Source: Selaginella moellendorffii
Lineage: Eukaryota; Plantae; Lycopodiophyta
NCBI RefSeq assembly: GCF_000143415.4
Contig: NW_003314290.1
Location: forward strand, 1,664,454 to 1,728,453
Direction of reading: 5' to 3'
DNA: 64,000 nt
Part shown: positions 8,101 through 62,884 of the stretch, in pieces
Numbering within the stretch: the stretch's first letter is position 1
Layout: each line of letters begins with the position of its first letter
The notes under the pieces: model-generated
What the model saw: only the letters and a program-made list of their open reading frames with translations
Told to the model about the DNA's origin: nothing
Database searches by the model: none
Translations under genes and position numbers: made by a program

Positions 8101-8248
8101 AGCCACTTTAAAACTTTTGGCGCCAGAAATTTAAAAATGTCGTGGATAGGGGCTGATGTGGGCACATGTCGACGCGCCAAGTGGATAGGTTTTAAGTCTT
8201 GCGTGGCAATCCGGCGAGAATGCCGCCCTGCTCCGGAGCTCGATTGCG

Positions 8249-9690
8249 ATGGCGGCCGCCTCCTCCAGCCCCAGCCCTACGCCCAATGCCAACGCCAGCG
8301 TCGGCGCATTTGAGGCGCTCCACGACTGCACTGCCGTCGACTCGCCCGATCGATGGCTCACTTGCAACATGGAGTATGGAAATTTCTACAAGCTCTCCCG
8401 CCCAGCGTCGGCGGCGGTGGCCAGGCGCGCCGAGGTACGCTTCCAGCCCTAGGCTAGATCCCCCAGAGTGATCGATCATGGGTCGCCAGGGTTTTTGAGT
8501 AGCCGTGATTTCAATGGGCGCAAGCAAGCGACTAAACGAAACGATGGAAATTTTTTGTTTCTTGGTTTCTTGTTCTAGGCGCTGGCGGAGAAGCAAAAGC
8601 AGCAGCAGCAGCAGCGGCCACAGACCGTGCCCAATCTAAATCTCGAGGCGCTGCACGAGAAATGCGAGAAGAAATGGGAGTTGCTTACCAAGCAGCTGGA
8701 GGAGTGCCGGAGCGAGGTGGAGCAACTCCGGCTACAAAAACGCGATCAAAAGCCTGGTGATCTCTTGTGATCTCTCTTCCAACATCCCAAGTTCGGTAAA
8801 AAATAAAAAGTCAATTGATCGAAGTTGCTGATTGTTTCTTCTTCTTTTTATTTCAGAGAGTCCTAGAATCAGTCCTCGCAGCAATAAAAGCAGCCCTCGC
8901 GGAAACAAGACGTGTCGTGGAGAGTACTACGACGACGAGACCCCGCTTACAACCTCTCGCTGCGAGCACGACCGGGCTCAAAGCTCTCCCGGAAGATCTT
9001 CGTATGGCGACCGAAAAGCGTACGAAGGCAAGATCTACGTAGGGAAGAAGGACGACACTGGAAGAAGCTCGCCGGCACACAAAGTCTTTAACATTTACAT
9101 CAGGTATCCAAGAGAGTCTTCTCGTTTTTCTCCTTTTTCTCACGGCACGATCGAATCCACAGGAGAAGTCCATCGCCAAGTCGAGACAATGAAGAAGATA
9201 CCCAGCGATACGAAGATAAACGCCAGCGCTACGAAAACAAACACCAGCAACGTTACGAAGACGAACACCAGCAACGCTACGAAGACAAACAATCGCAACG
9301 CTACCGCCAGGAAGAAGATCTCGACGACGACGAGTTTTGCGACAAGTGCAAGATGATGGAGCGCCCCGGGAGCTCGCAGACGCAGCTCGACGATGTCATC
9401 CCTCCGCCGCGGCCGAGGCGAGTCAAGAAGAAGTGGCGAAAGCAGCGGCAGGACAGGGATCAAGCTTCCGACTCATCGGTTCATCCGGCAACTTCAAAGT
9501 ACAATTACTACAAGTACTACGGTATTTCTACAAGCTTTCAGGGGATGGAGGTTTTCTCACCGATACTGTGCGTTTCCATGTCTGCTGCTGCGCAGGTTTT
9601 GCAGGCCATGGTGCTAAGACGAGCTGGGGACATAACTTTCCTCTGGGATTGGTTCCACCGCATTCCGTGAGAGCTCCACCAGAGTTGTAA
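8249..9690 (+). CDS. Uncharacterised 5-exon protein A (coiled coil plus disordered region; shares terminal motifs with protein B at 53357-55787)
   Basis: Exons 8249-8434, 8579-8756, 8857-9103, 9163-9521 and 9596-9690 join in frame via GT-AG introns. The 3' end may have one more exon. Confidence 0.75.
9202..9310 (+). repeat. Coding tandem repeat, ~5 copies of 21-24 nt (QRYE[D/N]K[H]Q)
   Basis: Translates as TQRYEDKRQRYENKHQQRYEDEHQQRYEDKQSQRYRQ in the spliced frame. Confidence 0.8.
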
Positions 9691-10010
9691 GCTTCTTTTT
9701 AACTCGCTTTTCCTTTCGATTTCTCTCGAGCTTATCAGCGTGATTCCAGAGTTGTTCCCGAGGATATCATGTTTCGAAGGAATGTGTAGTAAGAAGTTTT
9801 TCTCGTGTTTTTTCTTCTTCGTTTCTTTTGTTCTTCTCTCCTCGTGATCTTAGTTGTATAGATCTTCCAGGTGAAAATTGCTATGGTTCTTCTAGCGTTC
9901 TCCACCGCGAGCTGGATCGAAAAGCATTTCTCCGGAGGATGTGATGGGCTTGCCAAGAAATTTTCAGCGAGAATGTGGTCCTTGGCTCTAGCCGCTTGGC
10001 TAGGGCATGG

Positions 10011-12425
10011 ATGTTCTTGTGTGAGCGGTGCTCTCGCGATCGTCTCGTCCTTGCGCGGTATGTTCTCGGGCTCTCCTCGATCGCAGTAGCTCAATCTCGT
10101 TCGACCCATCTCCGCCATGCCTCCCAGCCTAGCATCGCCCAAGAACACCACGACTTCCATCTCCTCCTCCCGGCGCTCCAGGCATGTACCGCCCTGCGCG
10201 ATCTCGAGATGGGCGACGCCATTGCCAATCTCGCCTCCAGCAGCAGCAGCAACGTCTTCGTCGCGAGCTCGATCGTCACCATGTACGCGCGATGCGCACG
10301 CATGGATCTTGCGAAGCGAGCTTTCGAGGAGATGGGGCCTCGCCGGGACGTGGTTGCGTGGAACTCGCTGCTCATCGGCTATGCCCGCAATGGGCATCCA
10401 GAGCTCGCGCTCGAGCTCTTCTCGAGGATGGAAGAGACCAACGCCGGGAGCTTCGTCGCGGCGATCAAGGCTTGCAGCGGTGGAATCGATCGAGATAGTG
10501 GCGGATCATCCGCGTTCCTGGATCGAGGGATCGCGATCCATCGCCAGGCGAGGAGAGCCGGCTGTGACGCCAACGTCTTCGTCGCCAACGCGATCGTGGA
10601 TTTCTACTGCAAGGCTGGGCGGTTGATCGAAGCTCGCGGGGTGTTTGATGCAATGCCCCAGCGCAGCGCCTCGTCCTGGAACGCGCTCATGCTGGGATTC
10701 GCCGAGAATGGGTCGCCGGAGGTGGCGATCGAGCTCTTCCATCGCTGCTGCGCGGTGGATTCCCGGGGTTTCGTCGCGGCGATCAAGGCGTGCTCCATGC
10801 TCGCTACACGGATCGATCGCGAGGAGGGCCGGGAGAGCTCGCTCGAGGCGATGGAGATTGGGAGGATCGCAGGGGAGAGTGGCATGGATCGCGAGAGCTT
10901 CGTGGCCAACGGGCTGGTGGATATGTATGCCAAGTGTGGCGCCATGGCGATGGCTCGCCGGATCTTCGACGCTATGGAGGAGAAGGACGTGGTCTCCTGG
11001 ACGGCGCTCATCTCCGGCTATGGCGAGAATGGAGAGGAGGCGATCGCCCTCGACGCTTTCGATCGATTCCACTCGCCAAACGAGCTCACGCTCGTGGCGG
11101 CGGTCAAGGCGTGCTCGCGGCTCTCGATCAAGGAGGAAGAATCGAGCTCCATAGCCGGGATGAAGATGAAGATGGATTCCCTGGCGAGGGCGATGAGGAT
11201 CCACGCTCGAGCGTGGAGATCCGGGCTTGGAACAAACACCCTTGTCGCGACCACGCTCATCGATCTCTACGCGCGGTGTGGCAGCCTGCTCGACGCGAGG
11301 ATTGCGTTCGATCGCATGGAGCTCCACTCCGCCGCGTCGTGGAACGCGATGATGCTCGGCTACGTCGATCACGGCCAGGCCCACGTAGCGCTGGAGCTCT
11401 TTTCCAGCACTGGAGGAGCTGCCGACGCTCGCGGCTCGATCGTGGCGGCGATCAAGGCGTGCGGGGAGCTCGGGCTGCTCGATCGCGGCGTGGAGATCCA
11501 CGCGCGAGCGGCGGAGCTGGGCCTCGCCTTGGATGGCTTTGTGGCGAGCGCGCTGGTGGAGATGTATGCCAAGTGTGGTGGCGGAGGAGTGGCGGAGCAT
11601 CGCGGCGGCGGGCTGGCGGAGGCTCGCAAACTTTGCGACGCTCTACCGGTGGGAGAGTTCGTGCCGTGGACGCGCCTGATGGTCGGCTACGCCGAGAGCG
11701 GCGAGGCGGAGGCGGCGCTGGAGATCTTCGCCCGCCTCCGCCTCCAGCGACCGCCGGATCCACAGCTCTTCCTGGCGGCGCTCTCGGCGTGTGGCGCGGC
11801 GGCGGCGCTGGACGCCGCGCGGGCCATCCACGCGGATTTGTCGCGTTCCGGGCTCGAGAGCTACGCGCCCCTGGCAAACTCTTTGATCGACGTTCATGGG
11901 AAGTGTGGCGATCTCGCGGCTGCCCAGCGGCTCTTCGATTCCTCGCGCTCGAGCTCCGAGGATCTGATGGCCTGGACGGCCTTGCTCGGCGCGTATGGCC
12001 GGGAGGGGGAGAGCCGGCGTGTTCTTGAGCTCTTTGGAGAGATGGTGGACGAGGGCGTCAAGCCCGACGGTGTGGCGCTTCTTTGCGTTCTCGCGGCGTG
12101 CAGCCATGCCGGGCTCGTCCACTCGGGCGAGCGGTGCTTCCACGCCATGGCTTCCAAGTTTGGGATCGTCCCGGGGATGGAGCACTACGTGTGCATGGTG
12201 GACATGCTTTGCCGCGCGAACCAGGTGGAGGCGGCGGTGGAGATGGCGAGGTCGATGACTCTCAAGCCGGGAGTTTTGATCTGGAGGACCATCTTGGGAG
12301 CTTGCCAGAGGTGGAAGAATGCCGAGCTTGGGAAGCTAGCTTTTGACGCGCTCGTGGAACTGGATCGCGACCAGGCCGTGGCTTATGTGTTTATGCGAAA
12401 CATGTACCAGACAACATTGGATTGA
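10011..12425 (+). CDS. PLS-class PPR protein with truncated E region, no DYW; intronless
   Basis: Repeated NVFVA..IV.MY.+CG / DVV.W.ALI.GY.++G motifs; HYVCMVDMLCRA...W.TILGAC end. Confidence 0.9.
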   Translation: MFLCERCSRDRLVLARYVLGLSSIAVAQSRSTHLRHASQPSIAQEHHDFHLLLPALQACTALRDLEMGDAIANLASSSSSNVFVASSIVTMYARCARMDLAKRAFEEMGPRRDVVAWNSLLIGYARNGHPELALELFSRMEETNAGSFVAAIKACSGGIDRDSGGSSAFLDRGIAIHRQARRAGCDANVFVANAIVDFYCKAGRLIEARGVFDAMPQRSASSWNALMLGFAENGSPEVAIELFHRCCAVDSRGFVAAIKACSMLATRIDREEGRESSLEAMEIGRIAGESGMDRESFVANGLVDMYAKCGAMAMARRIFDAMEEKDVVSWTALISGYGENGEEAIALDAFDRFHSPNELTLVAAVKACSRLSIKEEESSSIAGMKMKMDSLARAMRIHARAWRSGLGTNTLVATTLIDLYARCGSLLDARIAFDRMELHSAASWNAMMLGYVDHGQAHVALELFSSTGGAADARGSIVAAIKACGELGLLDRGVEIHARAAELGLALDGFVASALVEMYAKCGGGGVAEHRGGGLAEARKLCDALPVGEFVPWTRLMVGYAESGEAEAALEIFARLRLQRPPDPQLFLAALSACGAAAALDAARAIHADLSRSGLESYAPLANSLIDVHGKCGDLAAAQRLFDSSRSSSEDLMAWTALLGAYGREGESRRVLELFGEMVDEGVKPDGVALLCVLAACSHAGLVHSGERCFHAMASKFGIVPGMEHYVCMVDMLCRANQVEAAVEMARSMTLKPGVLIWRTILGACQRWKNAELGKLAFDALVELDRDQAVAYVFMRNMYQTTLD

Positions 12426-12581: not shown

Positions 12582-13484
12582 TTAGAAGGAGGGCGATCTT
12601 CCATTCCTCGGGAACGTCCAGAACTCTCTCTCCTGATCCTCCAGGGCCCAAGGATCCATCTCCTCTTTCTCCCGCCGAGAGTTCCTCCGCTTGCTTCGTT
12701 TTCGATCTTCCTCCGGTTCCGGTTGCGAGCCTCTCCTCCGCTTCTTACTCATGGCCAGTTGGTCGACCCTCTGATCATCGTCACACACCCTCTGGCAAAA
12801 AATGGTGGCAACCCTTTGATTAGCGTCAGACACCCTCTTGCGCTTCGGCACCTTGACCAAGATGGCCTCGAGTACGTTGGCCATTTCTAGCGTTTGTTGA
12901 TCAACCTCGATCTTTAGGGCTTCTCGATTTTCCACAAAGTTACGATGGTCTTGCGGGTGTCGGACCACGCGAGCAGCCCTGGCTTGAAAATCTTCGGGCT
13001 GGACTGGCCGAGCCAGCGGTCTCGGCGCGAGATCGGCATTGCAGCGATACTTACACTGGATCGAGCAGTAGAGCGAGACCGTGGTGAGGAGCACCCTATT
13101 GCAATGGCGGCACTGGTTCTTGTTTGCCAAGGTTGCATTTCGCGGCCTCCCGTGCAGGAAGTGGATGTAGTTGCCGTTGATCTTGAACGTCTCCAGGCCG
13201 GAGGTGTCGATCAGGGGCGCGATGTCGTCGACCTTCAACGCCGCAAACCTGGACGCGCTGAGGACCTGCAGGATGTTTGGCTTGCAGGCCTTGTGATCGC
13301 GCTGGTCGCACTCCTTGCAAAGGGCTTTCTCGCAGGCACGGCAAAACGAGGCGAGCTTTCGATTACCCGGACCGACGTCTGGATGGGTCGGGCAACCCTT
13401 GAAGAAGTTCGTCTCACCCATCAGCGCAAGCAGCCATGAGGAAGACGAAGAAGCTTGAATGTCGTCGCTCGCACGCTCCTCCAT
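12582..13484 (-). CDS. PLATZ zinc-dependent transcription factor, intronless
   Basis: WL..L..TNFF..CPTH...FCRAC...LCKEC...H; LQV...VDDIAPLIDTSGLETFKINGNYIHFL..RP; CRHCNRVL...YCSIQCK; basic NLS-like C-terminus. Confidence 0.88.
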   Translation of the reverse strand: MEERASDDIQASSSSSWLLALMGETNFFKGCPTHPDVGPGNRKLASFCRACEKALCKECDQRDHKACKPNILQVLSASRFAALKVDDIAPLIDTSGLETFKINGNYIHFLHGRPRNATLANKNQCRHCNRVLLTTVSLYCSIQCKYRCNADLAPRPLARPVQPEDFQARAARVVRHPQDHRNFVENREALKIEVDQQTLEMANVLEAILVKVPKRKRVSDANQRVATIFCQRVCDDDQRVDQLAMSKKRRRGSQPEPEEDRKRSKRRNSRREKEEMDPWALEDQEREFWTFPRNGRSPSF

Positions 13485-19346: not shown

Positions 19347-21446
19347 TTAAAAGGCGGATTTTCGAGTTCCCCCAAGTTGCTTGTAGATGTTTGAGAGGAG
19401 GATGAATGGACCGCTAGTCTGGGGCTCGAGCTCGATTATCCGGCGAGCAGACACGATCCCACCTGTGGTGTCACCGTGGTTACTGCAAGCGGAGAGGAGC
19501 GTCATCCATGCGATAACGTCGGGCTCAAACGGCATGGAATCCAGCAGCTCCCGGGCTTGTTTCAATCGCCCGGATCGACCCAGCATGTCAACCATGCACA
19601 GGTAGTGATCCATCGTGACTCCCGAGTGATAGTCCCCCGGGATGGACGAGAAGTAGCTCCTGGCGTGCTCTATCATCCCGGCGTGGCTGCAAGCCGAGAG
19701 AATCCTCACGAACGAGATGTGGTCCGGCTCAAGGCCGTGCTGGTCCAGCGTCTGGAATATCTCCAGCGCCTCGGCTCCAGAGCCGGCGGTGGAGCAAGCA
19801 GCCATGAACGAGTTCCACGCCGCGATGTCGACAGAGTTCTTCGAGGATTTATCGAAGAGGGCTCTCGCGTCGTCCAGGCTACCACACTTTGCGTACATGT
19901 TGATGAGGCTCTCGCCAACTGCATCGTCGAACAAGATGCCCGCCTCGACAACGCTCATATGGACTGCCTTGCCATCTTCCGCCACACCCAAGCTCGTACA
20001 AGCATCGAAGATCCCAATAAGCGTATACTTGTCTGTGGGATATCCCTCCAGATCTTTCCTCACGACCAACGCAATCGCCTTCTTCGCTTGCCCCTTCTCG
20101 GCAAATGCTGCGATCAGGATGTTCCAGGACACCGCGTTTTTATCCCTCATTCTCTCAAACATCAACTCGGCATCTTGTAATCGATCGTTGAATGCGTAGG
20201 ACGTGAGCATGGTGTTCCAGGAAATTGGATTCGGGCATGGAATCTCGGCAAACAGGGCCTCGGCTTGAGAAACATGCCCATGCAAAGCATATGCTCCAAG
20301 CAACGTGTTCCAGGACACGGTATCTTTCTCTGGGATTTGATCGAACAGATCTTTAGCCTCCACAACAACACCGCTGTGAGAGTACGCCCCAAGCATCGCG
20401 TTCCACGAGACAAGATCTTTTGTTCCCATCTTATCAAAGAGTTCCTTCGCTGCTCGCAAGTTCTTGCTTTGGGCATATGCTGTTAGCATGGTCGTCCAGG
20501 AGACGGTATCTTTAATCGGCATTTTCTGAAACAAATACCAAGCTTCTCTCAAGAATCCCGTTTGTGTATATCCAGTGATCATCGCATTCCACGAAACAAC
20601 ATTCCTCTCATTCATGTCATCAAATACTTGCCTCGCTTCATACAGATGCCCAGACCGGGCATATGCTACAAGCATCGAGGTTCTAGACACCACATCAGGA
20701 TCTGGCAGAGAATCAAATATATCCTTCGCTCGATCCATGAAACCCCTCTTGCAGAGTGCAGCGATTAGAACATTGCAAGCATAGGTTTTGGGTTCCGGCA
20801 TTCTATCGAGCAGCTCTTTCGCCTCCTCCAAATGCCCGTTTTGGGAATAAGCTGTGATCATGCTCGTCCAAGAGACTACATTGGGATCACGGATTTTATC
20901 AAAGACGGCTCTCGATTCCTCCACGCTGCCGCATCTCGCGTACATCGTGATGAGCCCATTTGCCACAACTTCGTTAGATTCGTGCCCAGCTTCCAGGATT
21001 TTGGAGTGGATCTCTCTTCCCAGCTCCAGATCCCAGCAAACACCCAGAACTGTGGCATACGTATGTGCGTTGAGCTGGAGAGTCCCGTCGCGTTGCATCC
21101 GCGCATAGATTTCCAGTGCCTCCCGCGGGAATCCATTGCCGGCGTAGACCTTGATCAGTATGTTCCACGAGAAGAGATTGGGGCGGTCGATGGAATCAAA
21201 CACCAGGCGCGCGCTCGGGACGCTGCCGCAGCTGCCATACGCCTCGACGAGGAGATTGCGCAGGAACTTGTTGCGGTGGAAGGAGCTCTCCAAGATCTCC
21301 GCGTGAATTGCACGGCATTGCGACAGATCCCCGGCATCTCTGCACGATCGCAGGCGCGCAGCGAGCAAAGCAATCTCGCCATCGCCATCCCCATCGCCGT
21401 GCTTCGTCTCCTTCCATTGCAAGCCAATGGACGGCTGAAATTGCAT
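19347..21446 (-). CDS. PLS-class PPR protein (many SS motifs) with E region, no DYW; intronless
   Basis: Array of 31-aa DxVSWNxMLxAYxxxG units; HYLCMVDMLGRSG...MPFEPDVIAWMTLLSAC...ILLSNIY. Start uncertain. Confidence 0.92.
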   Translation of the reverse strand: MQFQPSIGLQWKETKHGDGDGDGEIALLAARLRSCRDAGDLSQCRAIHAEILESSFHRNKFLRNLLVEAYGSCGSVPSARLVFDSIDRPNLFSWNILIKVYAGNGFPREALEIYARMQRDGTLQLNAHTYATVLGVCWDLELGREIHSKILEAGHESNEVVANGLITMYARCGSVEESRAVFDKIRDPNVVSWTSMITAYSQNGHLEEAKELLDRMPEPKTYACNVLIAALCKRGFMDRAKDIFDSLPDPDVVSRTSMLVAYARSGHLYEARQVFDDMNERNVVSWNAMITGYTQTGFLREAWYLFQKMPIKDTVSWTTMLTAYAQSKNLRAAKELFDKMGTKDLVSWNAMLGAYSHSGVVVEAKDLFDQIPEKDTVSWNTLLGAYALHGHVSQAEALFAEIPCPNPISWNTMLTSYAFNDRLQDAELMFERMRDKNAVSWNILIAAFAEKGQAKKAIALVVRKDLEGYPTDKYTLIGIFDACTSLGVAEDGKAVHMSVVEAGILFDDAVGESLINMYAKCGSLDDARALFDKSSKNSVDIAAWNSFMAACSTAGSGAEALEIFQTLDQHGLEPDHISFVRILSACSHAGMIEHARSYFSSIPGDYHSGVTMDHYLCMVDMLGRSGRLKQARELLDSMPFEPDVIAWMTLLSACSNHGDTTGGIVSARRIIELEPQTSGPFILLSNIYKQLGGTRKSAF

Positions 21447-21514
21447 GTGATCCAAGTGGACGGCTGAAATTGCATGTGATCCAAATGGACGGCTGAAATT
21501 TCGTGTGATCCAAA
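21428..21514. repeat. Three 29-bp tandem repeats (tggacggctgaaattgcatgtgatccaa[g/a])
   Basis: Units at 21428-21456, 21457-21485 and 21486-21514 (third slightly diverged). Confidence 0.9.
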
Positions 21515-45610: not shown

Positions 45611-45729
45611 GGATTTGCAAAGTCAAGAATAAAAGTCAATGTATTCAAAGACTCTCTTATCGTCCGAAAACTTTAATGTTTTTAAGGGGGTTAAAGGTAG
45701 TTGCCCTAATAAATTTTAGGGTTGTTACA

Positions 45730-48552
<2,823 letters not shown>

Positions 48553-53356: not shown

Positions 53357-55787
53357 ATGGCGGCGGTAGCTCCGGCACCACCGGTGCGATGGCGAGCCGA
53401 GTCCAAGGAGATTGGAGGCTTCTACACGTTTCTCAAGTCGGAGGTACGCTGTGGATTGCCTGCATTGCGATTGAGCTCTGCAAAACATGGATCGTTTTCT
53501 TCTCCTCGATCGCTTCTTCTCCGTCGGTTTTCCCCCAGGTGGACAAGCTCAAGGCGGCCGAGGGCAAGATGAGAACCCACGCGATGAAGCAGTGCAACGT
53601 GCTGCTCAAGGAGTACGTGAGCTTCAATCCTTACATCCAGCGCCTCTACTTTGAGCACATCCGGAGCAAAAAGTATGGCGATTCTAGATATCCTCAAGCG
53701 TACCGCTGCTCCATGCGACAGCTGAGGTCCCCATCGGGTAAGAAGATCCTCCTTCCACTCTCTAAAGTTCTTGGAACTCAGCCTGGTTTGATCCAGTTCT
53801 TCGTCTCTTCTTCTTCTGCCAGTGTGGGACTCGTCTCCTCCGGCTATTTTCCGAAGAGAGAGCACGGTGAATCCAAACCACATCATGTCCGAGTCGTCCT
53901 CCATGTCGGGCTACGAGAGCTCCGACCACGCAAGCGCTCGGATACTGGCCAAGACTCCAAAGCCAGAGCAGGGCCGAAAGAAATCTCCGGAGGGATCTCA
54001 TCATAGAGGGGCCGAGACTTCTCGAAACCCGGAGCGAGAGAATGGCAAGAACAGGTCTCCGGTTCTCATAAGATACAGGTCTCCGGACTCAAATCCGGAG
54101 AGGCCGAGCCAGGGAAGTCCTTACAGAATCTCCGAGGGGAGTCCCTTCAAGTATCGCAAAGCAGCAGGCCAACGAGTGAACGAAGACGTTGTGGACAGTT
54201 CTGTGTATCGTCAGCCGCCACCACCTCACCGGCAAGTTCAGCTGGATCATCCTACGTTTGCGAGGGTCATGGCGACGAGCGGCTCGGAAGTCGTCTCGGA
54301 AGTGTCCCGGTTTTTGACGCCGCAAGAGACGAGAGCTGCTGGTTCGAGATACGATCTCCCGACGCGGCTCTCGAGCGGCAGCAGCAGCGATCAGTCGACT
54401 CCGACAGCGGTGTTTGAGTCTTTGAACAGACGCACGGCGAGAGCGTCGGAACTTTCGACTTTGCAGTCGCGGTACTCGTCCCCGACGAAAACCATGGACG
54501 GCAGCAACGTCCTTTCAGGTGTCACAACCGAACCTCGGACGTCGTCGACGACTTCTTCGTCCACCGCAGGGATACCAGCAAGTAGCGATCTCCAGCATCG
54601 ACACCAGGCTTTGTTTTCCTCATCGAGTAGAACCACGACGACGACAACATCTTTGTCGAGAGCTTTTGACACAAGCTCAAGAACTCTGGACACTAGCTCA
54701 CAGGTTGGACTGCAGCAGCCGAGAACCGCATCCAGTGATGCCGTCACCAGCAGCTCTGCGAGGGGTTTGGATCGTGTTCCCGGCACTCCGTCCACGAAAG
54801 AAGTTTCTTTCGACGACGGTTTGCCTTACAAACTCGAGCAGGGAGGAGTCTCTTACCAGGACGAAGGCACTCAGACTTACTCGGACAGGATACCGGGAGC
54901 TCATGCATTGCGATATGGCATCGTCCAAGGTGGAGTTTCTCCTCCTCACAGGTCGGATCCAGATTTTCCCACTGCTGCTACCATGACTACTGCTACGACT
55001 ACTGCTACCATCACTACTGCGACGACTACTACTCCCACGACGACGACAAATGCTACTAGGAACGAAGTATCCAATCAACAACACCCCGCCGCTAGCTCTT
55101 CGACTCACACCCGAAACGCGAGTCCCAGCAAACTCCCTGGAGGTGGAATTTACACTTACAAGATGCCGGCGGGAGGCTCATACAGAATGCTTGATCACTC
55201 AGCCAGGCTGCCGGAGGCCAAGCTCGTCGAGGGCTCTAGCAACATTTATGTCATCGAAGACGCGACTCAGTACAAGGTGTCCGAGAGCCGGACGTCGGAG
55301 CACGTCACAGTCGGGCATTTGCTCTACGGTAGCGAGACGAGGACGCTCGACACCGAGAAGAGAAGCCGGACGAAAAGTGGTGACAACGCTCTCCGACTTA
55401 AGAGGTTCTCTTCCATGTTCGTCTGCCTCGTCCATGATCTAAAGCTTGCTCTTTTCTTGTTCTATCCTCCAGGAAAAAGAAGAAGTTTGCTGCTCACCGA
55501 TGCGATGTGAATGATCTAGTCCCCGAGCAGCGGAGAGTGAGGCGGAGATCCATCCAGAATCGAGTTCCAGAGACGAGGAAATACATGTTCTACAAGTACT
55601 ACGGTATGACACCAAAAATTCTTTTTTTGCCTTGAAGGTTTTGTGAGGGTTTTTTCTCCAAGGATTTGCTGGTCAAGGAGCTAAAACGAGCTGGGGTCAC
55701 AATCGCCCTCTTGGAATTTCTCCTCCTCACGCACAAAAAGCTCCTCCTCCTCCGGTGGTGGAAGGTGAAAGGCCCGACGCCGTGTAG
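53357..55787 (+). CDS. Uncharacterised 5-exon protein B (long Ser/Thr-rich disordered middle; paralogue of protein A)
   Basis: Exons 53357-53443, 53539-~53737, 53823-~55403, ~55473-55603 and 55663-55787 join in frame via GT-AG introns. Confidence 0.75.
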
Positions 55788-55942: not shown

Positions 55943-58782
55943 ATGGATTCCTCCTCCGAGGACGACGTGCCGCTCGCGGCGCGCTTCAAGAAGGCAAATC
56001 CAGCCAAGGATTCGGACGACGAGGACGACGTCCCCCTCGCCCGGCGCATCTTTTCCGCGAGAGCGCGCAATCCCGGAGCGGAGCAGCACGCCAGCTCCTC
56101 CAAGGATGGATCGGTGGCGGCGGCGCCGGCTTCCGCCGATTCCAACGCAAGCGGGAGGAAGAGGCCCGCGCCAGCGTCCGCCAATGGCAGTTCCAAGAAA
56201 TCCAAGGTCGAGGTGAGCTCCAGCGATGAGGAGAGTGAGGAGGAGGATGACGAAGACGAGGACGAGGACGTTCCCATTGGAAAGCGTTTTGGGGGCGATA
56301 GTGCAAAGCCAGGGAAGAAGGGAGCGACGAAGGGGAAGGCTGGGAGCAAGAAACCCAGAAAGGGGAGTGTTGCTGAGCCAAAATGGACGACGCTGGAGCA
56401 CAATGGCGTGCTCTTCCCCCCGCCGTATAGCCCGCATGGAGTGAAGATGCTCTACAATGGTCGGCCAGTCGATCTTACACCAGAAGAAGAGGAGGTTTGT
56501 AGCTCTTTGTTTCGCTTTCTTCGTTTAATTGTAGCTGGTCTTGCAGATCGCGACGATGTTTGCCGTGATGAAAGACACTGACTACGCAACCAAGCCCGTC
56601 TTTGTCAAGAACTTTTGGGAGGACTGGAAGAAAGTTCTTGGTCCAAAGCACGTCATCCAGAAGTTTGAGCTGTGCGACTTCACTCCTATTTTCGACTGGC
56701 ATGCCGCGGAGAAAGAGAAGAAGAAGCAAATGAGTGCAGAGGTGTGTTCGTCCGTGGATTATGTGTTTGTCTCACTTCTTTTTGCAGGAGAAAAAGCAAC
56801 TGAAAGAGGAGAAGGCGAAAGCAGAAGAACGTTATGCATGGGTTCTGATCGATGGTGTCAAAGAGAAGGCGGGGTTACTTCTTTTCTTTCCACCCCATGG
56901 CAGTTTTCTTACTGTAACTCGTGCCAACAGGTTGGAAATTTTAGAGTGGAGCCTCCTGGCCTTTTCCGGGGCCGCGGCGAGCATCCCAAGGTACTTAAGC
57001 TTCAGTTTGTTTGTAAGCTTCACACCATTGTCGTTTAGATGGGAAAGCTGAAACGGCGCATTTTTCCTGAAGACATTGTACTCAACATTGGAAAAGAAGC
57101 ACCAGTTCCAGAGTGTCCGCTTCCTGGTCACAAGTAAGTGTGCATTACATGATTCTTATCTTGTTAGGCTAACTTTGCTTACCGCAGGTGGAAGGAAGTC
57201 AGACACGATAACACCGTTACCTGGCTTGCGTTTTGGAACGACCCGATCAATGTGAAGGAGTTTAAGTACGTGTTTTTGCATCAAAGTAGTAGTTTGAAGG
57301 GCAAGAGCGATGAGGAGAAATACGATAAGGCTAGGAAGCTTACGTCAAAAGTAAGCAGGCGTTTTCTTTTCTTTTCTAATCTTCATTTCTTGTCAGATTG
57401 ATAGCATACGGGAATCTTACACAAAGGATTTTAAAGCGAAGGATGTGGAAGCACGGCAGATTGCGGTGGCCACGTATCTTATTGATAGGCTTGCTCTGAG
57501 AGCAGGAAACGAAAAGGTGGAAAGTGTGTCATTTTCGTGCCTGTGAATTGACATTTTGATTTCAGGATGACGATGAAGCTGATACGGTTGGCTGCTGCTC
57601 GTTGAAAGTGGAGCACGTCTCTCTTTCCCCTCCGAGCTCGCTTGAGGTGCTTTGTTGAGGACTTGAGACTGTTGTTTTGTGATCTATGGTTCGCATATTT
57701 ACAGTTCGATTTTCTGGGTAAAGACTCCATCAGGTACCAAAACTCTGTGGTTGTAAACGAAGAGGTATACGACGCTATACACGACTTCAAGAAAGGTATG
57801 TTGTGACTTGTGTTGTCCTCGTTGAGATGAGCTGTTTGTTACACAGGGAAAAAGGAAGGGGTTGACCTCTTTGATAGGTTAGATACTTCTAAGCTTAATG
57901 CCCATCTGAAGAAGTACATGCAAGGTCTAACAGCGAAGGTGTTTCGAACGTATAATGCGTCATATACTTTGGAGACGCAGGTTTGCGACTTTTGCTTTGT
58001 CAAGGCCAAAATGATCTGACGCATTACTTGTTACAGTTGAAGGAGACGCTTGGTGCGACTCTTAACGAGAAAACTGCAGAATACTCCCGAGCAAATAAGG
58101 AGGTAAGAGAACGTTCTGTTTGGTTAGCACTCATGAATCTTGTTGACAGGTCGCGATTCTATGTAATCATCAACGGACAGTATCCAAGGGCCATAGTGCT
58201 CAGATGGAAAGATTGGAGGCAAAGATTTCAGAGTTAAAGGTCTGTTTTTCTTTATGGTTTGTTTGAGGCTGACGCTTTGCTATTGGCAGACATTGCGTGA
58301 GGAACTTGCAACAGACTTGGGGAAAGTTAAAAAGGGCAAACCCCCAGTCCACAGCACCGCTAAAAGGCCTCCAACCGCAGAACAGTAAGTGGATGATTTT
58401 TATGTTTCCACTTTTATGATACTGACTATTCATGTAAATACCAGGTTGGAAAAGAAGTTGGCTCAAACTGATGCAAGGATAGCGAAGATGACCTTGGATC
58501 TGTCCGTCAAAGAAGATCTCAAAACCGTAGCGCTGGGAACGTCCAAGATCAACTACATGGATCCTCGAATAACAGTCGCTTGGTGCAAGCGACACGAAAT
58601 CCCCATTGAGAAGGTGACCAGGCACTCCTTACTTTCATTTCTTTTATTTCTTTTACTGAGGCAGGAGATTTGGATCACAGGTTTTTAATAAGTCATTGCT
58701 GGCCAAATTCGCGTGGGCAATGAACGTAGAGCCCAACTTCAGATTTTGTGAGGCTGATGGTGGTGCAGACGAAGACCTTTGA
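55943..58782 (+). CDS. TOP1: DNA topoisomerase I (type IB)
   Basis: [81 protein letters not shown] (catalytic Tyr). Confidence 0.97.
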
Positions 58783-58918: not shown

Positions 58919-60826
58919 TCATAGACGAGTGGATCCAGGTAGTCGGAAGCTGAGGCTTCTGGAGCTACCATCACTTGAAGGTGGTGGCAAGTCAAGAACG
59001 TCTATGTTACCTTCGAGCATATCCAGGACGTTTCTCATAGAGGGGCGGATTGCTGCCTCGGGTTGGATGCACCACAGTCCGATTTTCACGTACCTCTCGG
59101 CATCCTTGAGCTCCAAGCCACTGCTAGTGCTGGCGAAATCGTCGTCCAGGAGCTTCTCGTCAATAAGCTCGACGACGTTGCCACTGTGAAACATGCTCAG
59201 CGCGGTTTCGCCCAGGAAGCGCGGTTGTGAGGAGGATGAGGAGGAAGAGGAGGATGGAGGATGGAACTGGACGGTGCGCTTGGAGCTGACGAGCTCGAGC
59301 AGCACGATTCCAAAGCTGTAGACATCGGTCTTGTCCGTGACTTTGGTGTGGAGCCACTCGGGTGCCATGTATCCGGGAGTTCCTCGCATGACAGTCACCA
59401 CCTGGCTCTTTCCCCGCTCGGCGAGCTTGCTCAGGCCAAAGTCGGAAATTCTGGCTCGTAAGTTCTCGTCCAGGAGGATATTTTGAGGCTTGATATCCAG
59501 GTGAAGAACTTGCTCCCGGCATCCTTCGTGGAGGTATGTGAGTCCTCGAGCAACATCTAACGCGATTAAGTGTCTCTGGTTCCAGTTTAACAGCAGATTT
59601 GCTGATCCGCCACCTTTGTCATCATCGTTCTTGGTGAAGATCCACTTGTCCAGTGATCCATTGGGCATGAACTCGTAGACAAGCAATGCGGCTGGTCCCT
59701 GAATGCAAAATCCTCGAAGCTTTACCAGGTTGAAGTGGTGAATGCTGCCAATGGACATAACCTCGGCCTTGAACTGCGAGTGTCCTTTCGACGCGCCTTG
59801 GATCTCTACGTCCATCTTCTTCACAGCAACGAGGCTCCCATCCACAAGCTCTCCTTTGAAGACAGATCCAAATCCTCCAGCTCCAAGTATGAGCTCGGGA
59901 TCAAAGTTTCTAGTTGCCATCTTCAAGTCGTGATAGCTAAACTGGTGCGGAAGTATCTCATCGAGCCTCATTCCTTCGATGAGCACTTGCTTTTCCATGC
60001 GCCTCCTCCGAGATCTTCTCCACTTTCTGGTTGCAACGAAGATTACGACGCTAAGCACCACCCCGGCCACAGCGCTTGCTACCCCAGCGATCACTCCCAG
60101 ATAACTCTTTTTGCTTCGAATGAACTGTGGAAGATTACTATCAGTGACACTCCAAGTGACATTTCTCAAGATTCCAATGCCTGGATCATACCCAAGCTGC
60201 CTCCACACTTGCTCGTTCCCAGCCACAGCGTTTGGAGCACAGGGCTCCGTGAACGAATGATCGCTGAGACACCCGTCTGGGGAGTAGCATTGAGCCACCA
60301 TCCTGGCCACCGCAGTCCGTCCATTTGGAGCTAAAACTTGGATGTTTGTCGAGCACAAGCTCCGGTCTTGGCTATACCATCCAGTGGCCAGCGCTGCCAT
60401 GGGTTCCATATTCCATTGCGAGGACGTGCACGGCCTGAGAGACCCCGGATTTGAGAGGTTGAAGCTTGTGACATAGAGGACGGCATTGTTGGTCCCTTGC
60501 AAAGTTGGAGAGCAAGTGAAAGTCCTGTAAGCTAGGCCTGGGACGCAGCAATTCGGGCAGTCTGGAGCGATGGTGGCATTCAAAATGACGCTGGAGAAGG
60601 GCTTGCAAGCTTCGGAATCGCTGAGATATGGCTCGGATTGATTGCTCGATTGGTAGCAGGATGAATTGCGGAGTGAACGGTTGCCGCTGAGCATGGGCTC
60701 CGGGAAACAAAGATATCCATTCGGGCAGTCGCTTGATGAAGAACATACCTGTTGTTGGGCTTGCAAGTGGAAACTCCTGGTGCTACATAACACTATCATG
60801 AAGCACATGAGAAGCGACACCTCCAT
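58919..60826 (-). CDS. Receptor-like kinase with kiwellin (ripening-related, RlpA-like double-psi beta-barrel) ectodomain; intronless
   Basis: Signal peptide; Cys-rich CSSSSDCPNGYLC; CCVPGLAYRTFTCSP...ALATGWY...C...APNGRTAVA...C....GC..DH....PC..N.V....VW..LG...VTWS; TM (GVIAGVASAVAGVVLSVVIFVA) followed by RKWRR; intact kinase (LGAGGFG, VAVK, HLDIKPQN, DFG, GTPGYMAPE). Confidence 0.9.
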   Translation of the reverse strand: MEVSLLMCFMIVLCSTRSFHLQAQQQVCSSSSDCPNGYLCFPEPMLSGNRSLRNSSCYQSSNQSEPYLSDSEACKPFSSVILNATIAPDCPNCCVPGLAYRTFTCSPTLQGTNNAVLYVTSFNLSNPGSLRPCTSSQWNMEPMAALATGWYSQDRSLCSTNIQVLAPNGRTAVARMVAQCYSPDGCLSDHSFTEPCAPNAVAGNEQVWRQLGYDPGIGILRNVTWSVTDSNLPQFIRSKKSYLGVIAGVASAVAGVVLSVVIFVATRKWRRSRRRRMEKQVLIEGMRLDEILPHQFSYHDLKMATRNFDPELILGAGGFGSVFKGELVDGSLVAVKKMDVEIQGASKGHSQFKAEVMSIGSIHHFNLVKLRGFCIQGPAALLVYEFMPNGSLDKWIFTKNDDDKGGGSANLLLNWNQRHLIALDVARGLTYLHEGCREQVLHLDIKPQNILLDENLRARISDFGLSKLAERGKSQVVTVMRGTPGYMAPEWLHTKVTDKTDVYSFGIVLLELVSSKRTVQFHPPSSSSSSSSSQPRFLGETALSMFHSGNVVELIDEKLLDDDFASTSSGLELKDAERYVKIGLWCIQPEAAIRPSMRNVLDMLEGNIDVLDLPPPSSDGSSRSLSFRLPGSTRL

Positions 60827-61116: not shown

Positions 61117-62884
61117 ATGGATCATCGCAGCACTTTCTTCGCGCTCGCGATGATCTCACTCGCCAGCGCCACCGCGCAGCATTTCTCCTCCTCTTGCGGC
61201 GCCAGATGCGACGATTGTTCTGGCGGTCTCGTTTGCAATCCTGTTAGCAAGACCTGCGATGGTGATCCAGGAGCTAACACCCTTTCCTGCCCAATTCCCG
61301 GCTGCGAGCCCGCGCAGACCTTCGTCTACTCGAATGCCACCGCCCTCAATCCCGAGTACTGCGTCGGCAACTACACCTATCAGCTCTTCAATTGCTCGCC
61401 TAAAGAGCAGTCTCTCAACTTCGCGGCTTTATACTACATCGAGCTGGAGGGGCTTCCCACGGCATGCAATCGGTCCACGCCCTACAAGAACTCGGAGCTC
61501 CTGGCAAATATGGCCACCGGATGGTTTGCCAGTGGATCCTCGTGCTTCAAAGAGATTGCAATCACGGCAGAGAATGGATGAGCGTCACGGCGACGGTGGC
61601 GGACATTTGTGCATCGACGATGGGGTGTAGCCCAGCGACTGGATACTACGAGCCGTGCACGCCCAGATCGCTGAGAGGGACGAGAGGTGTGTGGAAAGCG
61701 ACGTATTTTGATAATGTGTTGCAAGTCACTTGGAAGTGGATTCGAAAAAACGCACTCTTTTCATTGCACTGGTTTCTAGTGGAGCACTCGTTGCCTTGCG
61801 GCGCTCTTAAGGATTTTCTGGTGGAAGGTCGTGAGACTGTCCAATGCCGCCAAGAAGAAGCTCCATCTGGGGGATCGCACGGATGCCCCGCGGCAAATCA
61901 GGTACCAAGAGCTGTATCGAGCGACCAAGGGATTCCAGAGCAAGTGGGAGAGGGAGGGCTTGGGACTGTGTTCAAGGGGACGCTGCCCAGCGGAGAGATT
62001 GTAGCGGTCAAGAGGATTGGCGGTGGATCGCGGCAGGAGGACAAGCAATTTAAGGCGGAGGTGATGTCGATTGGCAGCATCCATCACCTCAATCTCGTCA
62101 AGCTGGATTTTGCCTGCATTCTCCCCACAACTTACTCGTCTACAAGTTCCTCGCCAATAGCTCGCTGGATAGATGGGATTTTGCCAAGGACAAGTACCTG
62201 CCCTGGGCAACCAGGCTTTCCATCGCGCTCGACGTCGCTTGAGGGCTTGCGTATCTCCACGATGGATGCCGCGAGAAGGTACTCCGTCTAGACATCAAGC
62301 CACAGAACATCCTCCTGGACGAGAAGATGAATGCCAAAATTGCCGACTTTGGATTCTCAAAGTTCATTGACAAGGACAAAACGCATGTCGTGACAGTCAT
62401 GCGGGGCACGGTGGGATACATGGCTCCCGAGTGGCTCCACTCTCGTGTCACGGACAAGACGGAAGTCTATAGCTTTGGAATCGTCCTCCTGGAGCTTGTT
62501 TGTAGCATAAAGGCCGTGGAGTGTTCCTTGTACTCGGACTCGCAGATGGACGTTGTGTTCCTCACCCAGACCGCTTTTAACAAGCTCCACAGTGGAAACG
62601 CCAAGGACTTGGTGGACGATCGGCTGCTCAAAGCCGAGGACGGTGGTGGTTTTTTCTTGAGTGGCTTTGAGAACATCCTCCTGATCGGGTTATGGTGTAC
62701 GCAGGAGGATCCCTTGCGGCGACCAACGATGTCTGTGGTGGTGAAGATGCTCGAGGGTGCCATGGATGTGTTGGCGCTCCCTCAGCTGGAGAGACCCGCT
62801 GCACAGGATTCATCGCTCTTGGTGAGCAGCAGCGAGAGCTCGGGAGTGCAGATCTCCATCTCGGTTTTGGACTTGGCTCGCTAA
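61117..62884 (+). pseudogene. Kissper-kiwellin receptor-like kinase, disrupted
   Basis: Signal peptide, kissper-like SSCGARCDDCSGGLVCNPVSKTCDGDPGANTLSC, kiwellin body, TM and kinase. Frameshifts near 61578, 61745, 61798, 61938 and 62105; in-frame TGA at 62240-62242; HLD changed to RLD. Confidence 0.82.

What the first reader, a model, noticed from the sequence alone, without database searches (positions are those of the whole stretch)
8249..9690. Undescribed gene family: two proteins 45 kb apart share only terminal motifs and identical intron phases
Seen: protein A (8249-9690) and protein B (53357-55787) align without gaps at the N-terminus (RWLTCNMEYGNFY vs RWRAESKEIGGFY) and strongly at the C-terminus (LDDVIP..RRVKKK...PATSKYNYYKYY|GFAGHGAKTSWGHNFPLGLVPPHSVRAPP vs VNDLVP..RRVRRR...PETRKYMFYKYY|GFAGQGAKTSWGHNRPLGISPPHAQKAPP). 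Both have four introns of phases 0,1,2,1, and the last splits the same Gly codon. The middles are unalignable and differ greatly in length. The C-terminal motif is cut by an intron and is not visible whole in the ORF track. I recognise no known domain.
Basis: seen in the sequence. Interest (0 to 1): 0.8.

Follow-up and report, generated by a model that had tools for sequence, protein, structure and literature searches.

The report
Undescribed motif protein family in Selaginella
Two spikemoss genes 45 kb apart are real paralogues of an unnamed, mostly disordered protein family that occurs in green algae, mosses, liverworts, lycophytes and ferns but in no seed plant found, a spread that suggests, without proving, a role in the swimming-cell (flagellar) apparatus.

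Summary
In this Selaginella moellendorffii window, gene A (8249-9690) and gene B (53357-55787) both have GT-AG introns of phases 0,1,2,1. The last intron splits the same Gly codon inside a shared C-terminal motif (56 aa, 61% identity, E=3e-19).

No Pfam family, solved structure or searchable paper covers the motif. A profile search of 1.84 billion proteins found 45 relatives. All named ones come from green organisms with flagellate cells: Selaginella (a third paralogue), ferns, mosses, liverworts, Mesostigma, Chlorokybus and chlorophytes. None is from a seed plant.

Streptophyte members share three blocks: an N-terminal W.T...[DE]YG.FY motif, a confident helix, and the C-motif. The 0,1,2,1 intron pattern recurs in Riccia, Physcomitrium and the third Selaginella gene. 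Chlorophyte proteins share only the C-motif, often in two copies.

Transcript contigs confirm introns 1, 3 and 4 of A, including the motif-splitting one. The productive A isoform was therefore not seen, and B's RNA was not tested.

My best reading is a green-lineage docking-motif family tied to the flagellar or basal-body apparatus. The family is near certain; the function is about even odds.

The parts
8249..8434 (+). Gene A exon 1 (62 codons). It holds the N-motif RWLTCNMEYGNFY at 8351-8389.
   Evidence: The contig 5' end lies at 8206, and the 8434|8579 junction is supported by contig pieces in X1 and X3.
8579..8756 (+). Gene A exon 2, ORF-preserving form. It encodes the conserved helical block (HEKCEKKWELLTKQLEECRSEVEQL) and ends at the weak donor GTGATC (phase 1).
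   Evidence: RefSeq protein P0047 maps exactly with this donor. The intron position and phase match Riccia, Physcomitrium and Selaginella C.
8757..8795 (+). 39-nt extension of exon 2 seen in the transcript contigs, using donor GTAAAA at 8796. It holds an in-frame TGA at 8768-8770 and begins with a 10-bp tandem duplication of the donor (8757-8775).
   Evidence: a joint at 8795|8857 in X1, and matching loose ends in X3. One search shows the tandem repeat. One search shows the same sequence on the other haplotype.
8857..9103 (+). Gene A exon 3, a low-complexity S/R/P-rich linker.
   Evidence: The 9103|9163 junction appears in all four runs, from four studies.
9163..9521 (+). Gene A exon 4. It holds QRYED-type 24-bp tandem repeats (9209-9304), a basic patch, and the first half of the C-motif (PATSKYNYYKYY, 9485-9520) plus the first base of the split Gly codon.
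   Evidence: The 9521|9596 junction appears in X1 and X3.
9596..9690 (+). Gene A exon 5. It holds the rest of the Gly codon, the second half of the C-motif (FAGHGAKTSWGHNFPLGLVPP, 9598-9660) and the stop at 9688-9690. An optional extra intron (9687-9749) replaces the stop with 12 more codons that end at 9789.
   Evidence: One search shows the extra intron spliced in X2 record 6 and retained in X1 record 3 and X2 record 5. RefSeq model P0047 uses it.
53357..53443 (+). Gene B exon 1 (29 codons), with the N-motif RWRAESKEIGGFY at 53387-53425.
   Evidence: Allele P0001 has the same structure.
53539..53737 (+). Gene B exon 2, a divergent counterpart of the helical block. The following intron is phase 1.
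53823..55404 (+). Gene B exon 3 (527 codons), an S/T/P-rich low-complexity middle with no relatives outside Selaginella.
   Evidence: only the allele P0001 was found. Between haplotypes there are 9 synonymous and 15 non-synonymous differences.
55473..55603 (+). Gene B exon 4. It holds a basic patch, the first half of the C-motif (PETRKYMFYKYY, 55567-55602) and the first base of the split Gly codon.
55663..55787 (+). Gene B exon 5. It holds the rest of the Gly codon, the second half of the C-motif (FAGQGAKTSWGHNRPLGISPP, 55665-55727) and the stop.
   Evidence: Between haplotypes, exons 4-5 show 3 synonymous and 0 non-synonymous differences.

Best explanation
A and B are locally duplicated paralogues in Selaginella moellendorffii. 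A third paralogue, LOC112345456, lies elsewhere. They belong to an unnamed streptophyte protein family with four parts:
1. An N-terminal W.T...[DE]YG.FY motif that runs straight into a long helix of about 50 residues, probably an oligomerising coiled coil.
2. A fast-evolving disordered linker of very variable length.
3. A basic patch.
4. A C-terminal aromatic and glycine-rich motif of about 30 residues: P...[RK]Y.[FHY]YKYYG[FY][AG]G.GAKTSW[GA]HN.

The C-motif is disordered on its own. I read it as a docking peptide that folds on a conserved partner. The same motif, often in two copies, is the only part shared with a set of chlorophyte proteins.

The family is found only in green organisms that make flagellate cells, and in no seed plant. 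The most likely partner is therefore part of the flagellar, basal-body or sperm-microtubule apparatus, with the helix and linker acting as a spacer or cross-linker.

What is shown: the homology, the architecture, the conserved intron pattern, the taxon spread and the lack of any description. What is inferred: the docking mechanism and the flagellar link.

Gene A is transcribed. In the sampled RNA its assembled form uses a stronger donor 39 nt downstream in intron 2 and so carries a premature stop. Full-length A protein may be made only from a minor or tissue-specific isoform.
For: Gene models and the A-B match:
- Gene models, intron phases and the split Gly codon.
- C-motif similarity between A and B, E=3e-19.

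Relatives:
- The profile of the C-motif finds 45 proteins at E<=1e-3 among 1.84 billion.
- The named ones are Selaginella A, B and C, Adiantum, Psilotum, Physcomitrium, Sphagnum, Marchantia, Riccia, Mesostigma, Chlorokybus, Pedinophyceae, Cymbomonas, Bryopsis and Volvocales including Chlamydomonas.
- None is from a seed plant.
- One Volvox africanus entry is named 'Flagellar associated protein' by UniRef.
- The Cymbomonas members fuse EF-hands to the motif.

Architecture:
- The streptophyte alignment shows the three conserved blocks.
- The N-module HMM built without A and B scores A at 35 bits and B at 13.5 bits, against at most 8.3 bits for shuffles.
- Intron phases 0,1,2,1, with the last intron in the motif's Gly codon, also occur in Selaginella C, Riccia and Physcomitrium.
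- AlphaFold2 on the third paralogue gives helix 14-66 at pLDDT about 90 and the C-motif below 50.
- Profile-profile comparison of streptophyte and chlorophyte sets aligns the motif only (98.3%, E=1.7e-14).

Constraint and expression:
- Both haplotypes keep both ORFs. B's C-terminal exons show 3 synonymous and 0 non-synonymous differences, against 9 and 15 in the middle.
- RNA contigs confirm introns 1, 3 and 4 of A.

Context from the literature: Koshimizu et al. (bioRxiv 10.1101/2021.07.25.453666) cite Banks et al. 2011. That work found that 32 of 137 gene groups present in Chlamydomonas, Physcomitrella or Selaginella but lost in angiosperms resemble flagellar or basal-body genes.
Against: - There is no direct evidence of localisation or of sperm-specific expression.
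- The 'Flagellar associated protein' label is one submitter-derived name, on a chlorophyte protein that shares only the motif.
- I could not find the Chlamydomonas genes (Cre02.g079000 and Cre02.g079005) in any held proteome or transcriptome supplement, nor the Marchantia gene in held sperm-related supplements.
- No chain of any solved structure in the PDB copy, axonemal ones included if deposited there, matches by sequence.
- Most gene groups lost in angiosperms are not flagellar.
- Gene A is expressed in whatever tissues the public runs sampled, so it is not silent outside sperm.
- The assembled A transcripts carry a stop before the C-motif.
- B's transcription was not tested.
- About 15 of the 45 hits are unnamed fragments whose taxa I inferred only from the motif type.
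Confidence: 0.55

Rival explanations
1. The family is real and conserved but has nothing to do with flagella. It would be a cytoplasmic or nuclear scaffold or regulatory protein, since basic patches resembling nuclear localisation signals precede the motif. It would serve some other trait of algae and spore-bearing plants, and seed plants would have lost it for unrelated reasons.
For: - Only about a quarter of the 'angiosperm-loss' gene groups looked flagellar in Banks et al. 2011, as cited.
- Gene A is transcribed in ordinary public runs.
- Basic runs (RRVKKKWRKQR in A; KRKKKK and RRVRRR in B) sit just before the C-motif.
- No solved structure in the PDB copy, axonemal ones included if deposited there, matches by sequence.
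Against: - Every named taxon has flagellate cells, across bryophytes, a lycophyte, ferns, two early streptophyte algae and many chlorophytes. None of the very numerous seed-plant proteomes gave a hit, although the profile was built from a vascular plant.
- One Volvox relative is named a flagellar associated protein.
Confidence: 0.3
2. Gene A is a decaying or non-coding duplicate. Its normal transcript is the stop-containing form, and the full-length open reading frame seen by the reader and by RefSeq is not translated. On this reading only B and the third paralogue are functional.
For: - Contigs from two studies (X1, X3) join 8795|8857, which includes the TGA at 8768-8770. No contig shows 8756|8857.
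- The ORF-preserving donor is weak (GTGATC) and the donor actually used is stronger (GTAAAA).
- A 10-bp duplication sits at the donor.
Against: - Contigs drop minor isoforms, so absence of the productive form is not shown (tool note).
- Apart from this 39-nt piece, all five exons stay open in both haplotypes.
- A matches the family N-module HMM better than B does (35 against 13.5 bits) and keeps a canonical C-motif. That implies long purifying selection since the old A/B split.
- The extension is a multiple of three, so it behaves like a regulated 'poison' extension rather than random decay.
Confidence: 0.12
3. The resemblance between A and B is chance or compositional, and the gene models are artefacts.
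For: The N-terminal match alone is weak (E=0.43), and the middles are low-complexity.
Against: - C-motif similarity of E=3e-19.
- 45 relatives, with E down to 1e-15 outside Selaginella.
- The same intron position in a liverwort and a moss.
- RNA-confirmed splicing across the motif.
Confidence: 0.01

Closest known systems
Chlorophyte proteins of the Chlamydomonas Cre02.g079000 / Cre02.g079005 type (Volvox africanus VaNZ11_001612, named 'Flagellar associated protein' in UniRef)
   Same: They carry the same motif of about 30 residues (HYKYYGFAGKGAKTSWAHNPKY). The profile-profile match to the streptophyte set has 98.3% probability and E=1.7e-14. They have no Pfam domain and are largely disordered.
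   Different: They have two motif copies about 200 residues apart, a different conserved N-terminus (HFH.P.NE.NRF) and different intron positions. Only the motif is demonstrably homologous. Orthology with A and B is not shown.
Single-copy streptophyte relatives: Selaginella LOC112345456, Psilotum, Adiantum, Physcomitrium LOC112295142, Marchantia Mp5g03150, Riccia, Sphagnum, Mesostigma, Chlorokybus
   Same: They share the N-motif, helix and C-motif architecture and the 0,1,2,1 intron pattern, with the last intron in the motif's Gly codon.
   Different: They are mostly short (about 230-320 aa). A, and especially B, have expanded lineage-specific low-complexity middles. Bryophyte proteins end just after the GAKTS core of the motif and lack the WGHN.PLG..PP tail.
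'AngiospermLoss' gene groups of the Selaginella genome paper (Banks et al. 2011) and plant BLD10 (Koshimizu et al., bioRxiv 10.1101/2021.07.25.453666)
   Same: The same phylogenetic signature: present in Chlamydomonas, moss and Selaginella and absent from angiosperms. That study used this signature to find basal-body and flagellar genes.
   Different: BLD10 belongs to the pan-eukaryotic CEP135 family and has a shown function. The present family has no relative outside green organisms among the hits and no tested function. I could not check whether it is one of the 137 groups.
Filamentous microtubule-associated or microtubule-inner proteins that bind through short repeated motifs (for example Chlamydomonas FAP45 and FAP52, studied in PMC6408466)
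   Same: This is a resemblance of design only: largely unstructured proteins with short conserved aromatic or glycine-rich modules, repeated in the chlorophyte members.
   Different: There is no sequence similarity to any solved axonemal chain. The comparison is an analogy from general knowledge, not a tested relationship.

Membership tests
Unnamed streptophyte family (N-motif, helix, C-motif) | C-terminal motif P...[RK]Y.[FHY]YKYYG[FY][AG]G.GAKTSW[GA]HN | tested here: met
   A and B both carry it. The profile retrieves members with E from 4e-15 to 1e-3. The motif table covers 74 unique instances.
Unnamed streptophyte family (N-motif, helix, C-motif) | N-terminal W.T...[DE]YG.FY motif followed by a helix | tested here: met
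   An HMM built from other species scores A at 35.0 bits and B at 13.5 bits, against 8.3 bits for the best of 2000 shuffles. B is divergent (Ile for Tyr, Ala for Thr). The helix is predicted with confidence in the third paralogue.
Unnamed streptophyte family (N-motif, helix, C-motif) | Four introns of phases 0,1,2,1, the last splitting the Gly codon of YYG|FAG | tested here: met
   Seen in A and B on both haplotypes, Selaginella C, Riccia and Physcomitrium (which has one extra 5' intron).
Chlorophyte Cre02.g079000-type proteins ('flagellar associated protein' by one name) | Two motif copies and the conserved HFH.P.NE.NRF N-terminal block | tested here: not met
   A and B have one motif copy. 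hhalign aligns only 36 motif columns between the two sets.
Chlorophyte Cre02.g079000-type proteins ('flagellar associated protein' by one name) | Presence of the protein in isolated flagella | not testable with these tools
   The only support is the UniRef name of a Volvox entry. The gene identifiers were not found in the held supplements.
Any Pfam-A family | A score at or above the gathering threshold | tested here: not met
   Exon by exon there is nothing below E=0.1. Full-length relatives give nothing except EF-hands in the Cymbomonas fusions.
Proteins with solved structures, including axonemal proteins if deposited | Sequence match to a PDB chain | tested here: not met
   The best E-values are 0.46 to 0.94, to unrelated enzymes.

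The most novel reading that the evidence does not exclude
The YKYYG-GAKTSW motif would be a previously unrecognised docking module, specific to green organisms, for the flagellar, basal-body or sperm-spline microtubule apparatus. Its loss would track the loss of motile sperm in seed plants. Selaginella gene A would additionally be kept off outside spermatogenesis by a stop-carrying 39-nt exon extension (regulated unproductive splicing).
Probability: 0.3. Interest if true: 0.65.

Novelty: new variant of a known kind. Interest (0 to 1): 0.5.

Why it matters
Plant sperm and green-algal flagella have lineage-specific structures, such as the spline, the multilayered structure and the stellate transition zone, whose proteins are largely unknown. 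This family is conserved and unnamed, has a sharp 30-residue motif, and shows a spread of 'flagellate green organisms only'. That makes it a concrete candidate that can be tested by knock-out or tagging in Marchantia, Physcomitrium and Chlamydomonas.

It is also an annotation lesson. The motif is split by a conserved intron, and two older JGI models mis-splice it and lose part or all of it. Exon-wise or ORF-wise scans therefore miss the family. The motif and the N-module are ready material for a new Pfam or InterPro entry.

Tried and rejected
- Pfam on every exon and on ten full-length relatives: nothing.
- Word-index search with B's large exon and with the C-terminal 74 residues of its allele: only the allele itself.
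- PDB sequence search with the motif profile and with the Volvox protein: only chance hits.
- ESM Atlas look-alikes for the Chlamydomonas protein and the third Selaginella protein: no score of 0.9 or more. The Atlas models have pLDDT 0.36 and 0.50.
- Full-text searches for the gene identifiers and for motif strings: nothing relevant.
- Supplement searches in two Chlamydomonas transcriptome papers, one flagellar-membrane proteome and two Marchantia sperm papers: no occurrence. For the central-apparatus proteome paper no supplement was held.
- The Selaginella genome paper was not held.
- DNA for the Adiantum locus could not be fetched.
- I considered a homologous N-terminus between streptophyte and chlorophyte proteins and rejected it after hhalign.
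- I did not run a fold search on the AlphaFold model. It consists of two long helices plus disorder and would only return coiled coils.
- The joined, spliced A or B protein was never sent to a search tool. Exons were searched by reference, and full-length searches used the database proteins P0001, P0046 and P0047. Joining was done only inside local scripts, for translation, the A-against-B blastp and codon counts.

Full report
**What is in the sequence.**
The window is Selaginella moellendorffii. The large exon of gene B finds SELMODRAFT_409366 at 96% identity, and RefSeq protein XP_024536815 (P0047) maps exactly onto gene A.

I rebuilt both models from the DNA:
- Gene A has exons 8249-8434, 8579-8756, 8857-9103, 9163-9521 and 9596-9690 (354 aa).
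- Gene B has exons 53357-53443, 53539-53737, 53823-55404, 55473-55603 and 55663-55787 (707 aa).
- All introns are GT-AG and 59-144 nt long, with phases 0,1,2,1 in both genes.
- The last intron splits a Gly codon (G|GT in A, G|GA in B) between ...YYKYY and FAG.GAKTSWGHN...

A local blastp of the two proteins gives one strong match, the C-terminal 56 residues at 61% identity (E=3e-19). It also gives a weak N-terminal match (E=0.43). No third copy lies in the window.

**How the searches were done.**
The joined spliced proteins were not sent to any search tool. Exons were searched by reference, and full-length work used database proteins that the tools returned (P0001, P0046, P0047). Joining was done only in local scripts.

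**RNA evidence for A.**
Four runs from four studies are labelled only as guessed RNA, but their contigs skip introns with GT..AG ends, so they derive from RNA.
- Intron 3 (9103|9163) is seen in all four runs.
- Intron 4, the motif-splitting one (9521|9596), is seen in X1 and X3.
- Intron 1 (8434|8579) follows from the contig pieces of X1 and X3. Each has 47 record letters between the two pieces, exactly the length of 8580-8626, which the tool masked as a CAG repeat.
X1 has a joint at 8795|8857, and X3 has matching loose ends on both sides.

Exon 2 is thus 39 nt longer in these contigs and contains an in-frame TGA at 8768-8770. Read from the ATG, this transcript gives 125 residues with the N-motif and the helix but without the C-motif.

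The ORF-preserving donor is weak (GTGATC) and sits in a 10-bp tandem duplication. The donor actually used is GTAAAA. The other haplotype has the same sequence.

Contigs drop minor isoforms, so the productive form is unobserved rather than excluded. RefSeq models it. Its intron position and phase match those of the relatives (below).

A minor extra 3' intron (9687-9749) is spliced in one X2 contig and is used by RefSeq. It replaces the stop with 12 more codons.

**Is it a known domain?**
- Pfam gives nothing for any exon or for ten full-length relatives. The only exception is EF-hands in two Cymbomonas fusion proteins.
- The PDB sequence search gives only chance hits.
- ESM Atlas neighbours are uninformative, and its models are disordered.
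- Neither the gene identifiers nor motif strings occur in the searchable literature.
- All source names are 'hypothetical' or 'uncharacterized'.

Two older JGI models spoil the motif. P0048 mis-splices the last intron. P0002 uses an acceptor 9 nt downstream and so drops three motif residues (FAG).

**Relatives.**
I aligned the allele of B with the two C-terminal exon pieces of A as separate rows. I then searched 1.84 billion representative proteins with that profile, since the claim rests on absence of relatives. It found 45 proteins at E<=1e-3 and 8 at E<=1e-10.

Named members:
- Selaginella: A and B with their alleles, plus a third paralogue, LOC112345456/LOC112345532 (229 aa).
- Ferns: Adiantum and Psilotum.
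- Mosses: Physcomitrium and several Sphagnum species.
- Liverworts: Marchantia (Mp5g03150) and Riccia.
- Streptophyte algae: Mesostigma and Chlorokybus.
- Chlorophytes: Pedinophyceae, Cymbomonas, Bryopsis, Haematococcus, Sanguina, Volvox, Pleodorina, Astrephomene, Edaphochlamys and Chlamydomonas.

C. reinhardtii has two identical copies, Cre02.g079000 and Cre02.g079005, 30 kb apart.

No seed plant appears, although the profile came from a vascular plant and seed-plant proteomes dominate plant databases. By established botany, all named taxa make flagellate cells. The roughly 15 unnamed fragments carry the chlorophyte form of the motif.

**Architecture.**
The streptophyte alignment shows three conserved blocks:
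- the N-motif W.T...[DE]YG.FY;
- a helical block, C[ED][RK]KCE.L...L......L..L;
- the C-motif, with Y, Y, G, G, G, A, T and S invariant.

An HMM of the N-module built without A and B scores A at 35.0 bits and B at 13.5 bits, against a maximum of 8.3 bits for 2000 shuffles. A is in fact the more canonical of the two.

The intron pattern 0,1,2,1, with the last intron in the motif's Gly codon, recurs in the third Selaginella gene, in Riccia and in Physcomitrium, which has one extra 5' intron. It is therefore ancestral to land plants. Chlamydomonas introns differ.

AlphaFold2 on the third paralogue, with a 13-sequence alignment, gives a confident helix at 14-66 (pLDDT about 90) and a second helix at 100-146. 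The C-motif stays below pLDDT 50.

Profile-profile comparison of streptophyte and chlorophyte sets aligns only 36 motif columns (98.3% probability, E=1.7e-14). The chlorophyte proteins, usually with two motif copies, share the module but not demonstrably the whole gene.

**Selection.**
Both haplotypes keep both ORFs. For B the C-terminal exons show 3 synonymous and 0 non-synonymous differences. The middle shows 9 and 15 (pN/pS about 0.55), and the N-terminal exons 3 and 3. The numbers are small, but they fit constrained ends and a relaxed middle.

**Interpretation.**
- *Shown:* a real, ancient, unnamed family. A and B are old local duplicates with expanded disordered middles. The family is defined by a split C-terminal motif, an N-terminal motif with a helix, and a conserved intron pattern.
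- *Inferred:* the C-motif is a docking peptide that folds on a partner, and the helix oligomerises.
- *Inferred from taxon spread:* the partner belongs to the flagellar, basal-body or sperm-microtubule apparatus.

Three things support the last point:
- the clean 'flagellate green organisms only' distribution;
- one 'Flagellar associated protein' name on a Volvox relative;
- the EF-hand fusions.

As background, Koshimizu et al. cite Banks et al. 2011, who found that 32 of 137 groups lost in angiosperms look flagellar. The same paper notes that RNA-seq of sperm-producing Selaginella tissue is scarce. That could explain why only the stop-carrying A isoform was assembled.

Against the flagellar reading:
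- there are no localisation or expression data;
- no match in solved structures in the PDB, axonemal ones included if deposited there;
- no hit in the held supplements.

I put the family claim at about 0.95 and the flagellar link at about 0.5.

**Verdict.**
One real caveat concerns A's intron 2. The finding is a new, well-delimited protein family of an ordinary kind (a conserved, uncharacterised, motif-bearing protein), with a suggestive phylogenetic profile. Interest is moderate.

Noticed in passing
window 8757-8795: A 10-bp tandem duplication (GTGATCTCTT, 1.9 copies) sits exactly at the ORF-preserving donor of A's intron 2. The assembled transcripts use the next donor, at 8796, and so include an in-frame TGA at 8768-8770. 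The other haplotype has the same sequence. This may be a 'poison' exon extension.
   Followed up: partly
window 9687-9789: An optional 63-nt intron (9687-9749) removes A's stop codon and adds 12 codons. It is spliced in one X2 contig, retained in X1 and in another X2 contig, and used by the RefSeq models on both haplotypes.
   Followed up: partly
window 9521-9606: Older JGI protein models spoil the motif. SELMODRAFT_416195 reads through the last donor. SELMODRAFT_409378 uses a CAG acceptor 9 nt downstream and drops three residues. RNA contigs support the upstream acceptor at 9596.
   Followed up: yes
window 9209-9304: A's exon 4 holds 24-bp tandem repeats (about 4 copies) that encode QRYED-type units. 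The copy number or sequence differs between the two haplotypes (16 gapped codons in the middle region).
   Followed up: partly
L004 and L005 (Chlamydomonas reinhardtii chromosome 2, about 819-861 kb): The Chlamydomonas relative is present as two genes that encode identical 434-aa proteins (Cre02.g079000 and Cre02.g079005), 30 kb apart. In both places the upstream neighbour ends at the same locus coordinate, which suggests a recent segmental duplication.
   Followed up: partly
window 58919-60826 and 61464-62291: Two adjacent ORFs combine a kiwellin (KWL1) domain with a protein kinase domain.
   Followed up: no
window 9975-12425, 19347-21455, 12582-13484, 45676-47259, 55943-56581: The neighbouring genes are two PPR proteins (one with an E motif), a PLATZ/B-box protein, an AAA ATPase with a nucleolin-binding domain, and the start of a topoisomerase I gene directly downstream of B. 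None has an evident link to the family.
   Followed up: no
L001 3001-3897 (Selaginella third paralogue): RefSeq isoforms X1 and X2 of LOC112345456 differ by two residues (RQ) at the first intron's acceptor, a tandem-acceptor type of alternative splicing.
   Followed up: no
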